Shown: in pieces, positions 34,477 through 38,612 of the stretch | Layout: the number at the start of each line of letters is the position of its first letter | How positions within the stretch are numbered: position 1 is the stretch's first letter | NCBI RefSeq assembly: GCF_001194135.2 | Contig: NC_068996.1 | Location: 54,140,076 to 54,201,484 of the forward strand | DNA from: Octopus bimaculoides | Taxonomy: Eukaryota | Reading direction: 5' to 3' | DNA length: 61,409 bases | Translations under genes and position numbers: made by a program | The notes under the pieces: generated by a model | Databases searched by the model: none | What the model saw: the letters and a program-made list of their open reading frames with translations, nothing else | Told to the model about the DNA's origin: nothing

Positions 34477-36339
34477 GGTAATTTTCTTTTTAATTTTTTG
34501 TTTTTGTAGAATAGAAATATTCTTTGTTCGATTCTAATGAGTAATTTTATTGTCAAAATTATGGCAATAAAAATATAAAAACAGCCAAAGATTAAGAGTA
34601 ATAACCACAACTCGGACCATTTACCTTGATTTTTAATCCGTATTTACGATTCGAAAACTGCAACCCTGTCTCAAATTTTGTTCTATATCTCATTACATAA
34701 CAGGAAACAATAAAAGAAAGTTAAGTAAACGAAAGCATATCTTTATGTTTAAAACATATTTTGTTTTGTTGCAGATTATTTTAGTGTATGAACTAAAATT
34801 ATTAGCAAAGATGTCTCTAGATTCAAGAATTTAATTTCTTATACGCTTTGTACGACCATTAATGTCAATTCGCGTGCACCATACAACCATTAGTCCATAC
34901 TAATATTTACATCTTTTATCTTTTAATTTTAACTTGTTTCTTAAGAATTTTTAGTCAAATGAATGGACCTCAGTACTTATTCTTTAAGCCCAGTACTCAT
35001 TCTATCGGTTTCTTTATTTCAACCGCTAAGTTACGTTTGTCAAGTGGTGGTGAGAGATAAGAACGGATATAAACACACACACTTAACACACATAATGTGT
35101 ATATATAAATTGATTATATATATAACAATTGTAAATTTAACATAAACTTAATATCGTAATAATAATAAAACTTAAAAGCAAAAACAAAAAACCTGTATAG
35201 AGATTTTGCTTTGCAGAACTTTTTTCGGTAATTAGAATCTTACAAGAGTTAAAATGCTCAATCAAAAACTAATTTTCTCAAACTTTCTCTCTTTGTCGAT
35301 CAAGAATATTACACTAGAAAACTCAGTAAGCGCTTCCCGTGATAAGCATTCATTTTATAATTATATAATTATTATTTTTCTAACGAAAGAATAATGTCAG
35401 TACTGTATGTATTATGATGTAGGAATTGCACTTGCTAGATAATTAATCGTCCACATTTTAGGATCATGCGTGCGTGTGTATCTGCGTGCGTGCGCGCGTT
35501 TGTAATCTTATAACTGATAGCCAGTCTTGTTACTAGTATACATGTAAGCTAGCACAAAATGTACTTGGCAGGACCACCAGCGAGTGAACCGGCAATGAAA
35601 CCAATCTTTTCTAGTGATGTGTGATATTTGGAATGTACGTGAATTTACATATCCGTTCGTGTTCAGATCTTAAATCGAGATCATGTCCATTTTGTTTGCA
35701 TCCTACAAAGATTAAAGCAAAAACAAAACACCCACAAAAAGCAACAAAAAACCTCCAACAAATATTGGGCATGCAGTAACTGATTGTAATTTCGAGTATA
35801 TTACCCCATTATGGCCACAGTCTAATTAATGAAAGCATTAAAAGAATATCTGAAGGATGAAAAACAAAAATAATATTCCTTACATAGTAATATTATTTAA
35901 TATAGAATTATTACCTCTGCCTTAGCGAAGGTGGAGGTATTGTTTTCAGTCGTGTTTGTTTGTTTGTTTGTTTGTCTGTGGACAAGATATCTCAAGAACC
36001 GCTGGATGGATTTGGGTGGAACTTTAAGGGACGTTTGCAGTCATGACTGGCACAAACTGATTAGATTTTGGGATCGATTTTTTTTTTATTACCTATGAAA
36101 AGCTACATAAAAATCGAGACAAAGCAAACGCAAACTCTGGGAACTAGAAATTACAAATAAGGAGAGACTCAGCAGAAAAAATAAAATAAACGAATAATAT
36201 GAAAATATGAAAATGAGGCGTAATGTCCACCCGACCCCCGAAGTCGAGTGGTTACATTTAGTCAGTTTTTCTCTTTAACATAAAAGTCTATGTATATGCA
36301 TTTTCCTTTGTCTTTTTTCTCTTTTTTTTTTCACAGAAT

Positions 36340-36909
36340 TTACATTAGATTTTTCCAGATTTTTATTTCTATTCTTTTCAACTCGTCATATTCGATTACA
36401 GGAGGTGGGATCTCACGCAACCGACATACTCGTATCCTTGATTCTACATTAATTTCATCTATGAATCTCTCATGCTGTTCTTCAGATATTAAAATATATC
36501 CTTCATTTGCTCCAACCTCTCTTCCAGTCATCTTCACTCTGATCTGTTCCTTCCATTCCGCGATTTCTCTTTCCGTATCCTCACTCTTCTCATATCTTAT
36601 CAGGAAATAGAACCACTCGCCCCACTTACGAGTGGCCTCATTTTCTACTTTCTAAATCCTGAATCTTCTAGCACATCGATACCAGTTTCCTAACCACCTA
36701 TCGTACGTAGTAAATCCTTGGAATGAGCTCCAGCTGCAGTCCACCTCCCAAAAATAAAATCCAGCCATATATTCTTGTATCTTTTCCTCCTGCCTCTTGT
36801 CTAGTATTACACACAAGTGATGTTCCTCCACGTTATCAAACCCCGCAGTTCCAATACACTTTATGTCCCATTCCGCCGAATCCCTTAACAGTTCGTCGCT
36901 AAGCAACAT
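36340..36909 (-). pseudogene. Unrecognised ~190-codon reading frame with one in-frame TAG (36652-36654)
   Basis: ORFs 36652-36909 and 36340-36537 are in the same frame and linked by KVENEATRKWGEWFYFLIRYEKSEDTEREIAEWKEQIRV. Confidence 0.65.
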
Positions 36910-37995
36910 ATAAATTCTACACTTTTCCTTCTCTTTTTTGACTTGGGGGAGGGGTTTTGGGTTTCTTTGTATGTGTTTATCTCTTGTTTTTGTGTCGGAT
37001 GGGAATGGATAGGCCTAGTGTCTGCAGAGAGTGGGTGGGTCTGAGAGGGTGTGGGGTGGGGTTTACAGCTTAATTCACTTGCCTTTTTTTGTTTTCTTCC
37101 TGTCACATTTCCCATTTATTTTTTTCTACTTCCGTTTCTTTTTCGGTTACTTCCTTTCTGCGGTTCTCTTCTATCTTCTCTTCTGTATTTTCTGGTCGCT
37201 TTTTTCTTGGTTTTCTTGTCTTTGACGTACCTTCTGCTCTTATGTGTCCCTTCAGACCACATTTAAAGCAGCGTAGAACTGTTCCTTCCACCCTGACAGT
37301 CATAATTCTTTCTTCCATAATTATGGTTTCCGTAATCTTTTCCATCGTTTCTTTTGAACCCTAGATTATCATCTCCAGTAATTGACCTCTCCAGTTGACG
37401 CAATTTTTTTCTTGGCCTGGAGCACCATTATGTTGTCCTCATTACCACAGAGGACCGCATCTGCCACCCAGGTCACAACAATCTCCGGTGGGATTCCTTC
37501 AACCGTGACCCTTGTTGCTCTCATGCCTCTATACGTGGGCAACAGCACCACTTCTTCGCTCCAAATTCTCGTCGCTGCATGTTGCCTTGCTGCTGCTGCA
37601 TTACGAAACCTCACTTCTACTGTTCCAAATGTTGAACCTCTTGTCAGGTATATTATGTCTTCCCAAATCTGCTTTAACGCCTTTTCTATTTGTTCTGTCG
37701 TGACGACGTCTATTCTTCCTTTATTTATCGAAAAGGTTCGATAGATTATCGTCTTTTCCCTTATTTCGTTTTTAACCTCTTGCGGGGGCGACAGCTTCAC
37801 TTCAAACCCATCTCGGTTCATTTCTTCTTTGTGTCTTCCGAATTCCCTAATGTCCACTTCTGTTTCCTTGGACCTTGCTACATCAGCAAAATTCCTCTTC
37901 TCTTTAATCAGTTTCTGGTCCATTGTCTTAGCTGCCTCCACCAACTCCTCCTCGGACGATGACATGTCTAAGTAACTATAACTGTCTTCAGACAT
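36885..37995 (-). pseudogene. Tx1/L1-like ORF1 (RRM-like region + gag-type zinc knuckle), disrupted by two frameshifts and a nonsense codon
   Basis: ORFs 37369-37995, 37103-37345 and 36885-37115 can be joined: GTVEVRF, RVTVEGIPPEI, VRVEG..RCFKCGLKGHIRAE(G), W.-VTGRKQKK; the last knuckle Cys reads Gly. Confidence 0.75.
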
Positions 37996-38612
37996 TCTTC
38001 AACCAGCTGTCTCTTCTCTTACGAGAAGAGAAAGCACAAGCAAATTACACACGTAAACACCTAAACCGCTGCAAAGCAGCACAAAAATCTATTTTCACCA
38101 ACACGAAATTACAACTGGCATGCACTGATTAGATTTGGGGCTCGATACAATACCGGACAAGGATTCTGGATTATTATTTATTTTTTTTTACTTAATTTTT
38201 GAGAGCAGTCGGGCTCATTTTTAGTATTCTCGTTTGTGAGAGCAGTCGAGTTTATTTCAGATATTCTCATTTTAAAAATTATCTCTGGCTAATCGTTGAG
38301 AGGGTGTTGCCTTAGTGGAGATTCGCGCTCTCTGAGTGCTCTTGTTAATATTAAAATTGGGTGAAATAAATGTTTTTACCTCGGAAGGATAGTGTATAGG
38401 TACTTTTAGATGGATGGATTTTTTATAACGTTGAGTTAAAATATGTAATATTTGCCTTTGTAATATTTCTGCATTTTAAAATATTTGGTTGAATAAAATA
38501 ATTATAGTTTAACATATTTGAGCGATTGTTGAGTATGATAGACTGCTGCAGTAGTTTTAGCTCGAGATTAACAACAGTTCACTATATTTTGTAATATACT
38601 AGAGTTCGTTAG

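What the first reader, a model, noticed from the sequence alone, without database searches (positions are those of the whole stretch)
36079..38113. Self-contained 2-kb 'half-LINE': ORF1 plus an orphan frame, poly(A) tail, no RT or endonuclease
Seen: a ~118-nt leader, ATG at 37995, a Tx1/L1-like ORF1 with a CX2CX4H knuckle, a second ~190-codon frame, a ~250-nt T-rich 3' UTR, AATAAA merging into A10, and flanking duplications. Nothing resembling APE or RT lies between ORF1 and the tail. Ordinary 5'-truncated LINE copies lose ORF1 first, so this is the opposite pattern. Established: half-L1 (HAL1) elements encode ORF1 only and are mobilised in trans. Inference: this is a HAL1-like non-autonomous family derived from a Tx1-type LINE in a cephalopod, possibly undescribed, and carrying extra coding capacity.
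Basis: partly seen in the sequence, partly recalled or inferred. Interest (0 to 1): 0.85.

Follow-up and report, generated by a model that had tools for sequence, protein, structure and literature searches.

The report
ORF2-less copy of an octopus LINE
This 2-kb stretch is an old, broken copy of an octopus jumping gene (an L1/Tx1-type LINE) that kept its first gene and both ends but lost its reverse-transcriptase gene; the supposed extra gene is just the tail end of that first gene, so it is a fairly ordinary though undescribed relic.

Summary
On the minus strand, 36079-38113 is a 2,035-bp unit bounded by a 33-nt target-site duplication (28/33 identical). It has a 118-nt leader, ATG at 37995, an RRM-type ORF1 with a decayed CCHC knuckle, a long second frame, a 261-nt 3' UTR and AATAAA+A10. 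No APE or RT is present.

- **LINE origin: supported.** This ORF1 sits directly upstream of an APE-RT-zinc-finger ORF2 in full-length ~5.3-kb elements of Octopus vulgaris, O. sinensis and Argonauta hians. That ORF2 matches human L1 ORF2p at E=2.5e-71.
- **"Orphan frame": not supported.** Its C-terminal ~100 codons are the conserved C-terminal domain of the same ORF1 protein. In intact relatives this is one 500-600-codon ORF. Here it is displaced by frameshifts and broken by stop codons.
- **ORF2-less copies recur.** Two other ORF2-less copies, also flanked by duplications (O. bimaculoides, O. vulgaris), have different deletion extents, so such derivatives arise repeatedly.
- **HAL1-like family: untested.** Whether this particular form amplified as a family could not be checked, because no octopus genome was searchable by DNA.

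An ~85-codon W/C-rich segment inside ORF1 has no relative and stays unexplained.

Verdict: a dead, ORF2-deleted L1-Tx1 derivative, probably mobilised in trans. Modest interest.

The parts
38114..38146 (-). 5' copy of the target-site duplication (ATCGAGCCCCAAATCTAATCAGTGCATGCCAGT)
   Evidence: It is 28/33 identical to 36046-36078 and flush with the element's 5' end. Chance P=8e-12.
37996..38113 (-). 5' UTR (118 nt) containing the family box GATTTTTGTGCTGC
   Evidence: 38085-38056 matches the leader of the O. bimaculoides copy L003 (9860-9889) at 87% over 30 nt, E=7e-4. Similar boxes in L005 and L006 were seen by eye. In both the window and L003 the box lies about 25 nt from the 5' end.
37369..37995 (-). 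ORF1 part 1: N-terminal helices plus an RRM-fold domain, 208 codons still open
   Evidence: profile search, 437 relatives. AlphaFold2 model has mean pLDDT 87 with a beta-alpha-beta-beta-alpha-beta core at residues 82-153. Foldseek top matches are RRM domains.
37401..37414 (-). A-run where one base was lost, shifting ORF1 out of frame
   Evidence: Relatives (P0002, L005 ORF1 and others) continue in the neighbouring frame from this point.
37361..37363 (-). TAG nonsense codon inside ORF1, at the position of Gln in P0002
37229..37270 (-). Decayed CCHC zinc knuckle CFKCGLKGHIRAEG; the last Cys is replaced by Gly
   Evidence: zf-CCHC at E=0.048 for this copy; zf-CCHC in 9 of 33 relatives, best E=3.6e-6; intact CX2CX4HX4C in 10 relatives.
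36915..37228 (-). K/E-rich then P/T/H-rich linker of ORF1p, readable only by changing frame twice; includes the frameshift-induced TGA at 37103-37105
   Evidence: The motif W..V..KKKRK of relatives and the ADT(K/R)P stretch of L011 align only if the frame is changed.
36655..36914 (-).
   Evidence: The 120-codon stop-to-stop piece 36655-37014 that contains it has no stop codon, P=1.5e-4. No relative found. Not a duplicate of the C-terminal domain: hhalign probability 0.5%.
36652..36654 (-). In-frame TAG splitting the second frame
36340..36651 (-). C-terminal domain of ORF1p (LIRYEKSEDTEREIAEW...YILISEEQHERF...IPPPVIEYDELK) and the true ORF1 stop TAA at 36340-36342
   Evidence: a CTD HMM from six octopod proteins hits it at E=8.7e-5, best of 1,493 pieces; it aligns with the C-termini of P0002 and P0007; the same domain closes the single intact ORF1 in L005, L006 and L007.
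36079..36339 (-). 3' UTR: purine-rich spacer, short G-rich hairpin, T-rich body with the CATTTTCATATTTTCATATTAT box, then AATAAA plus an A-run
   Evidence: 36215-36175 matches the L003 3' UTR at 86% over 43 nt, E=5e-6. The terminal similarity to the family's 3' end is weak: an HMM of five relatives' termini does not hit it.
36046..36078 (-). 3' copy of the target-site duplication

Best explanation
The element is an old, dead, ORF2-less derivative of an octopod L1/Tx1-type LINE.

**The parent family.** It is about 5.3 kb long and has a 5' UTR and one long ORF1. That ORF1 contains N-terminal helices, an RRM fold, a CCHC knuckle, a K/E-rich linker and a C-terminal domain. It is followed by an abutting or overlapping ORF2 (APE, RT, zinc-binding domain), a ~210-255-nt 3' UTR and a short AATAAA/A-rich tail.

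**The window copy.** It keeps the 5' UTR, a whole ORF1 of about 552 codons and the 3' UTR. Essentially all of ORF2 (about 3.3 kb) is missing.

**Shown.**
- The element's anatomy.
- The homology of both reading frames to one ORF1p.
- The linkage of that ORF1 to APE-RT ORF2 in relatives.
- The target-site duplication and A-tail, which are the marks of target-primed reverse transcription.

**Inferred.**
- An ORF2-deleted RNA was reverse-transcribed into this site by ORF2 protein supplied in trans by a full-length relative. The RNA could have arisen by template jumping during reverse transcription, or by transcription of an already deleted copy.
- Its own ORF1p may have coated the RNA.
- The copy then decayed: three 1-nt frameshifts, two nonsense codons and loss of a zinc ligand.
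- The duplication's divergence (JC 0.17 between the two copies) suggests an age of roughly 20 million years, using the calibration in PMC13282606. The error on this is large.
For: **Anatomy.** Boundaries, frames and lesions.

**ORF1 family.**
- 437 representatives at E<=1e-3. All looked-up sources are octopods or unnamed Logan read assemblies.
- AlphaFold2 model at pLDDT 87 with an RRM topology, and RRM-only Foldseek matches.
- Knuckle recognised in relatives.

**C-terminal domain.** The second frame is homologous to the family CTD. It is part of one intact ORF1 in L005 (503 aa), L007 (527 aa) and L006 (601 aa).

**Linkage to ORF2.**
- Seen in L005, L001, L006 and L007.
- Pfam hits: RVT_1 8e-31, Exo_endo_phos 2e-15, zf-RVT 5e-9.
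- Human LINE-1 ORF2p at E=2.5e-71, against R2 at 1e-24.

**Absence of ORF2.** No ORF2 similarity inside 36079-38113.

**UTR homology.** Both UTRs match another ORF2-less copy, L003.

**Other ORF2-less copies.** L003 (895 bp, 16-nt duplication, 14/16) and L004 (1,732 bp, 15-nt duplication, 14/15) are also flanked by duplications.

**Literature.**
- Type I ORF1p is RRM plus CCHC and is consistent with the Tx1 clade (PMC5203782).
- O. vulgaris has 13 recently active L1-Tx1 families with 421 insertions, averaging about 5.4 kb (PMC13282606).
Against: - No second copy with the same ORF1-to-3'UTR junction was found, so retrotransposition of an already deleted RNA is not proven.
- A later genomic deletion inside a full-length insertion would leave the same anatomy.
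- The full-length parent of this particular subfamily was not found. The nearest proteins are 59% identical (P0001), and 35/40 identical over only a 40-residue stretch (P0107).
- The element's last 120 nt are not recognised by an HMM of the family's 3' termini, so 3'-end homology rests mainly on the shared box with L003.
- Putative remnants of the ORF2 start or end in 36235-36300 are not better than shuffles.
- An ~85-codon segment inside ORF1 is unexplained.
Confidence: 0.75

Rival explanations
1. This is the first reader's view: a true HAL1-like family. A master lineage of ORF1-only elements, all with this same 2-kb structure and junction, amplified to many copies using ORF2p from L1-Tx1 LINEs, with ORF1 kept under selection.
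For: - About 4 of roughly 9 ORF1-bearing loci inspected lack ORF2: the window, L003, L004 and possibly L002.
- All of the clear cases are flanked by duplications.
- A same-subfamily copy exists in O. bimaculoides: P0107 is 35/40 identical.
- HAL1 is known to arise repeatedly from L1 (PMC5753468).
Against: - The three ORF2-less copies belong to different subfamilies and have deletions of different extent. L004 keeps about 300 nt between ORF1 and the 3' UTR, and L003 lost half of ORF1.
- No second copy of this exact form was seen.
- The sample is biased towards copies that were annotated as genes.
- The 5.8-billion-protein search found nothing above 59% identity over a long stretch.
Confidence: 0.3
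2. A full-length LINE inserted here and lost ORF2 afterwards through an ordinary genomic deletion. On this view it is a one-off and was never mobile in this form.
For: The anatomy (duplication, both ends, internal gap) is equally compatible. The deletion extents differ between copies. No copy with the same junction is known.
Against: Three independent multi-kb deletions, each strictly internal to a 5.3-kb element, in so small a sample would be unusual. Deletions made at the RNA or reverse-transcription step, or trans-mobilised derivatives, explain the recurrence more simply. This argument is inference only.
Confidence: 0.2
3. It is a processed pseudogene of a host gene, for example a domesticated ORF1-derived gene, and not a transposon copy.
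For: It has a polyadenylation signal, an A-tail and a duplication, as retrocopies do. Some family members are annotated as octopus genes, for example P0140 with three isoforms.
Against: - The leader and 3' UTR match those of another LINE-derived copy.
- The ORF is co-linear with ORF1 of full-length LINEs, C-terminal domain included.
- The family has hundreds of diverged, fragmentary members and chimeric gene models, which is typical of a transposon.
Confidence: 0.04

Closest known systems
HAL1 (half-L1) elements of mammals
   Same: Both derive from an L1-type LINE, keep the 5' region and ORF1, lack ORF2, and are presumed to be mobilised in trans. HAL1 also arose several times independently (PMC5753468), as the different deletions in the window, L003 and L004 suggest here.
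   Different: HAL1 is defined as multi-copy families, each with its own consensus; that was not shown here. HAL1 carries a type II ORF1 (coiled coil, RRM, CTD; Transposase_22). This element has a type I-like ORF1 (RRM plus CCHC) with an additional unrelated C-terminal domain, and it has no Transposase_22 hit.
L1-Tx1 LINEs annotated in octopus genomes (PMC13282606, PMC8967140), and the Tx1 group generally
   Same: Relatives have ORF1 with RRM plus CCHC, ORF2 with APE, RT and zf-RVT, an A-rich tail and a unit length of about 5.3 kb. Hints of site preference were seen: a head-to-tail array and an insertion in (ATT)n.
   Different: The window copy has no ORF2. Clade assignment by RT phylogeny was not done. 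The ORF1p C-terminal domain and the W/C-rich insert did not turn up in the literature searches made here.
Internally deleted or spliced L1 insertions (template-jump deletions, SpIREs) in mammals (named from memory; no source was read for them here)
   Same: These are duplication-flanked copies with intact ends and an internal gap, produced at the RNA or reverse-transcription step.
   Different: No splice-site signature lies at the junction. The donor-like GTAAAT at the ORF1 stop is retained rather than used. The exact breakpoints could not be placed.
Type I ORF1p of plant L1 and other non-LTR elements (Khazina and Weichenrieder classes, as summarised in PMC5203782)
   Same: An RRM fold followed by a CCHC knuckle.
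   Different: No sequence match to DUF4283/zf-CCHC_4-type ORF1 beyond the knuckle itself. There is an extra C-terminal domain after a long low-complexity linker.

Membership tests
L1/Tx1-group LINE (as a derivative) | ORF1p with an RRM fold and a CCHC knuckle (type I) | tested here: met
   AlphaFold2 model at pLDDT 87 with a beta-alpha-beta-beta-alpha-beta core, and Foldseek matches that are RRMs. The knuckle is decayed here and intact in relatives.
L1/Tx1-group LINE (as a derivative) | ORF2 with APE endonuclease and reverse transcriptase | tested here: not met
   Absent from 36079-38113. Present directly downstream of the same ORF1 family in L001, L005, L006 and L007. The window copy is therefore a derivative, not an autonomous member.
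L1/Tx1-group LINE (as a derivative) | A-rich 3' tail and target-site duplication (TPRT insertion) | tested here: met
   AATAAA plus A-run, and a 33-nt duplication at 28/33 with P=8e-12.
L1/Tx1-group LINE (as a derivative) | RT phylogeny placing the family in the Tx1 clade rather than L1 proper | not tested
   No reference RT set was available. The ORF2 is much closer to human L1 ORF2p than to R2. Published octopus annotation lists L1-Tx1 with a matching mean insertion length of about 5.4 kb (PMC13282606).
HAL1-like non-autonomous half-LINE | Retains ORF1 of the parent LINE and lacks ORF2 | tested here: met
HAL1-like non-autonomous half-LINE | Many copies at different loci sharing the same length, junction and ends | not testable with these tools
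   No octopus genome was searchable by DNA. No second copy in the window. Protein look-ups gave only other subfamilies. The metagenome scan found nothing.
HAL1-like non-autonomous half-LINE | ORF1 intact in the family consensus, i.e. selected after the loss of ORF2 | not testable with these tools
   This copy has three frameshifts, two nonsense codons and a lost zinc ligand. No consensus could be built.
Processed pseudogene of a host gene | The parent is a host gene rather than a transposon transcript | tested here: not met
   The UTRs and ORF are those of the LINE family.
Spliced LINE insertion (SpIRE-like) | The deletion junction coincides with a GT...AG splice site pair of the parent | tested here: inconclusive
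   A donor-like GTAAGT/GTAAAT sits at the ORF1 stop in all copies but is retained here. The breakpoints could not be placed without the parent.

The most novel reading that the evidence does not exclude
Octopod L1-Tx1 LINEs regularly give rise to ORF1-only "half-LINEs" that are packaged by their own ORF1p and copied by ORF2p in trans. This would be an invertebrate counterpart of mammalian HAL1, built on a different ORF1p architecture: RRM, CCHC and a previously uncharacterised C-terminal domain. In this lineage the ORF1p would also carry a newly acquired W/C-rich ~85-residue module.
Probability: 0.3. Interest if true: 0.5.

Novelty: new member of a known kind. Interest (0 to 1): 0.3.

Why it matters
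It shows that the L1-Tx1 LINEs of octopuses carry a single long ORF1 (RRM, CCHC knuckle and an unnamed C-terminal domain). It also shows that ORF2-less derivatives of them recur in at least two Octopus species besides the window's source.

This matters for repeat annotation. Many octopus "genes" are in fact this ORF1, or chimeras with it. ORF1-only copies escape RT-based masking.

If such copies prove to be amplified families, half-LINE parasitism of LINEs would extend beyond mammals. As it stands, this is one decayed copy of a known type of derivative.

Tried and rejected
- **Pfam on both frames.** Nothing except a weak knuckle hit.
- **Word-indexed protein search with the second frame.** No hits.
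- **Third word-indexed search with a family alignment.** It was swamped by low-complexity words and gave only three hits.
- **Exact-protein contig look-ups.** Nothing on record for the window ORF, P0001 or P0002.
- **Single-sequence structure of the second frame.** Too poor to use, pLDDT 43, so no fold search was made on it.
- **Second frame as an internal duplication of the C-terminal domain.** Rejected: BLASTP E=0.43, hhalign probability 0.5%.
- **Remnants of the ORF2 start or end between the ORF1 stop and the 3' UTR.** Plausible by eye, but no better than shuffles. The best was p=0.03 in eight tests, so the breakpoints are left open.
- **Flanks as part of a host repeat that would show an empty site.** No other copy in the window or in 11 loci.
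- **HMM of the family's 3' terminus.** It did not hit this element's end, but found another tail at 59099-59161.
- **Profile against PDB sequences.** Only CCHC proteins, no L1 ORF1p.
- **Foldseek.** It gave generic RRMs, not L1 ORF1p specifically.
- **Related-locus search in metagenomes.** The single-protein scan found nothing.
- **Logan contigs L008 and L011.** Too short or interrupted to show the ORF1/ORF2 junction.
- **Bacterial promoter/terminator scan.** Irrelevant here.
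Full report
**1. Observation**

The element lies on the minus strand. Reading 38146 to 36046, the order of parts is:

- A 33-nt direct repeat, 38146-38114.
- A 118-nt leader.
- ATG at 37995, followed by a frame open for 208 codons, to 37369.
- In another frame, the knuckle CFKCGLKGHIRAEG, 37270-37229.
- A K/E-rich and then P/T/H-rich stretch.
- A 189-codon frame, 36909-36340, with one TAG at 36654-36652.
- A 261-nt T-rich 3' UTR ending in AATAAA plus an A-run, 36090-36078.
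- The second copy of the 33-nt repeat, 36078-36046.

The two repeats are 28/33 identical and flush with both ends. The chance probability is 8e-12. They define a 2,035-bp insertion at 40% G+C inside 34% G+C DNA.

The long frames are not chance. One stop in 224 codons has P about 2e-6 at this composition. There is no second copy in the window.

**2. What the first frame is**

Pfam sees only a weak knuckle. The word-indexed search found two O. bimaculoides proteins.

A four-row profile searched against 1.84 billion representatives found 437 proteins at E<=1e-3 and 140 at E<=1e-10. Twenty were looked up:

- The named ones come from O. bimaculoides, O. sinensis, O. vulgaris and Argonauta hians.
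- Six come from Logan read assemblies and carry no name.
- The named ones are mostly called "uncharacterized". The exceptions are P0005 ("EPM2A-interacting 1-like") and P0107 ("ISXO2-like transposase domain-containing").
- Several long hits are obvious chimeric gene models.

With 106 sequences, AlphaFold2 gives a confident model of the 208-residue frame, mean pLDDT 87. It has N-terminal helices and a beta-alpha-beta-beta-alpha-beta core at residues 82-153. Foldseek returns RRM domains only: La, nucleolin, U1A/SNF, hnRNP L. Probabilities are near 1 but E-values are weak.

The knuckle is intact (CX2CX4HX4C) in 10 relatives and scores as zf-CCHC in 9 of 33. This is a type I ORF1p, RRM plus CCHC, the kind reported for the Tx1 group in non-mammalian animals (PMC5203782).

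**3. It is a LINE ORF1**

DNA around relatives was fetched by exact-protein look-up.

- **L005 (O. vulgaris)** holds three head-to-tail, 98-100% identical units of about 5.28 kb.
  - Each unit has a 503-codon ORF1 overlapping a 1,132-codon ORF2.
  - ORF2 has Exo_endo_phos, RVT_1 and zf-RVT domains.
  - It matches human LINE-1 ORF2p over residues 3-867 at E=2.5e-71, against 1e-24 for R2.
- **L007 (Argonauta hians)** has a 527-codon ORF1 followed by a 52%-identical ORF2. By eye it is flanked by a 16-nt duplication.
- **L006 and L001 (O. sinensis)** show the same ORF1-ORF2 order.
- **Literature.** Published annotation of O. vulgaris lists 13 recently active L1-Tx1 families with 421 insertions totalling 2.29 Mb, about 5.4 kb each (PMC13282606). 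This fits the unit length.

I did not make an RT tree. "Tx1" is therefore the likely clade, not a tested one.

**4. The "orphan" frame**

In intact relatives ORF1 does not stop after the knuckle. It runs through a low-complexity linker into a C-terminal domain. A typical sequence is ..LIxYEKxxExEKKIxKL....ILIEKEExKKLKExFPxD..P....P.VV.YEEI, seen in P0002, P0024, P0101, P0007, L005, L006 and L007.

- An HMM of that domain, built from six octopod proteins without the window, hits window piece 36343-36651 as the best of 1,493 six-frame pieces, E=8.7e-5.
- Pairwise, P0002 aligns end to end with it.
- The first frame and the second frame are in the same phase.
- The knuckle and the linker lie in the other two phases. 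Relatives align only if the frame changes at the A-run 37414-37401, again just after TGG at 37114-37112, and again near 36915.

The ancestral gene was therefore one ORF1 of about 552 codons, 37995-36340. In this copy it is broken by:

- three 1-nt frameshifts;
- two TAG codons;
- a Cys-to-Gly change in the knuckle.

What remains unexplained is the N-terminal ~85 codons of the second frame, 36909-36655, which are rich in W, C and F. This segment has no relative anywhere. It is not a detectable duplicate of the C-terminal domain. Because its 120-codon stop-free stretch (P=1.5e-4 by chance) survives in a decayed copy, it was probably coding and is specific to this lineage.

**5. ORF2 is truly absent, and the UTRs belong to the LINE**

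tblastn with the family's own ORF2 finds nothing in 36079-38113. It does find a C-terminal ORF2 fragment at 13033-13903 in the same window.

The leader and the 3' UTR each match the O. bimaculoides copy L003: 87% over 30 nt and 86% over 43 nt. L003 ends in the family's canonical terminus, GCCCCTTCTGGGCAATTAAGAAA, which also closes L005, L006 and L007.

The window's own last 120 nt are divergent and are not recognised by an HMM of those termini. The 3'-end homology is therefore indirect.

I looked for remnants of the ORF2 start or stop in the ~100 nt after the ORF1 stop. The alignments are tempting by eye but no better than shuffles. The breakpoints stay open.

**6. Is it a family?**

Two further ORF2-less copies were found.

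- **L004 (O. vulgaris):** 1,732 bp, with a 15-nt duplication at 14/15.
- **L003 (O. bimaculoides):** 895 bp, with a 16-nt duplication at 14/16. It has lost half of ORF1 as well.

They belong to other subfamilies, and their deletions differ in extent from the window's. ORF2-less, end-preserving copies flanked by duplications therefore recur, in about 4 of 9 ORF1-bearing loci. That sample is biased towards copies annotated as genes.

This fits repeated formation and trans-mobilisation of deleted RNAs, as is known for HAL1 (PMC5753468). I could not show that the window's form was itself amplified:

- No octopus genome was searchable by DNA.
- The closest proteins are 59% identical (P0001), or 35/40 identical over a short stretch (P0107, O. 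bimaculoides).
- The metagenome scan was empty.

**7. Mechanism**

*Shown:* marks of target-primed reverse transcription (A-tail and duplication), an ORF1-only content, and full-length relatives that encode APE and RT.

*Inferred:* an ORF2-deleted transcript, driven from the 5' UTR, was copied by ORF2p supplied in trans. Its own ORF1p may have packaged it.

The divergence between the two duplication copies is 5/33, JC 0.17, or about 0.085 per copy. With the calibration in PMC13282606 (JC 0.065 at about 18 My, 0.09 at about 25 My) this puts the insertion at very roughly 20 My. The number of lesions in ORF1 fits that age.

A later genomic deletion inside a full-length insertion cannot be excluded.

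**8. Verdict**

- The LINE origin and the absence of ORF2 are supported.
- The "orphan frame" is mostly ORF1's own C-terminal domain.
- The HAL1-like family claim is untested.
- It is a new member of a known kind, an ORF2-less LINE derivative, in a host where none of the papers searched here describes one.
- Interest is modest.

Noticed in passing
L005:2447-17026 (O. vulgaris OX597840.1): Three full-length ~5.28-kb LINE copies lie head to tail at 98-100% identity. They are separated only by 9-nt spacers (CACTGATAA, CACCCGATA) that resemble the 5' flank of the first copy (ACCCGACA). This suggests either repeated insertion at the same site or duplication of the unit together with its duplication.
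   Followed up: partly
L005:4053, L001:11459, L006:9806, L007:9574 and 9587, L004:9152, window 36343-36338: A splice-donor-like GTAAGT/GTAAAT sits at or next to the ORF1 stop in every copy, full-length or not. In L006 and L007 a ~30-40-nt polypyrimidine tract follows, up to the ORF2 ATG. The O. sinensis gene model P0006 ends its ORF1 exon at about this point and adds 22 residues from a downstream exon. Its function is unknown; candidates are splicing, ORF2 translation or U1 binding.
   Followed up: no
window 59099-59161 (-): A canonical 3' terminus of the same LINE family (..GCCCCTTGTGGGCAATAACGAAAT, nhmmer E=2e-6) with no ORF nearby. Weaker GGGCCTTGTGCCTAT-type tails occur at 1016-1043, 2007-2032, 14709-14733, 56831-56855 and 58934-58959. 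These may be SINE or truncated-LINE tails sharing the LINE 3' end.
   Followed up: no
window 13033-13903 (+): A decayed C-terminal ORF2 fragment (RT end and zinc-binding region) of a related L1-Tx1-type LINE: tblastn with L005 ORF2, E about 1e-12 to 6e-15.
   Followed up: partly
L006:7720-7780 and 13350-13380 (O. sinensis): This full-length copy is embedded in an (ATT)n microsatellite on both sides. That is reminiscent of the microsatellite-specific Tx1-group elements, which I know from memory rather than from a source read here.
   Followed up: no
L003:9777-10671 and 10775 onward (O. bimaculoides): An 895-bp internally deleted copy (5' UTR, half of ORF1, end of the 3' UTR, 16-nt duplication) lies about 100 nt upstream of the ORF start of another family member. 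This is a second hint that copies land next to each other.
   Followed up: partly
proteins P0054, P0031, P0092, P0009, P0107, P0005, P0022: Octopus gene models that fuse this LINE ORF1 to what look by eye like WD40-like, C2H2 zinc-finger, astacin or LDLa sequence, or to an ISXO2-like domain (P0107's source name). P0005 is named "EPM2A-interacting 1-like". These are likely annotation artefacts caused by unmasked ORF1 copies.
   Followed up: partly
window 36655-36914 (-): An ~85-codon W/C/F-rich stretch inside ORF1 with no detectable relative and no confident fold. It could be a captured or newly evolved module.
   Followed up: partly
window 17549-18737 (-): ORFs interrupted by an N-gap contain motifs that looked to me like a Penelope-type RT and a GIY-YIG endonuclease (..GPSYANLFVGYVE....LYIGQMG..). 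A Pfam scan of the gap-free part gave no hit, so this is unverified.
   Followed up: partly
L007:8991-9235 (Argonauta hians ORF1): The ORF1 linker contains five tandem 39-nt (13-codon) repeats (..VSRMESPSTAA..). The linker evolves by repeat expansion.
   Followed up: no
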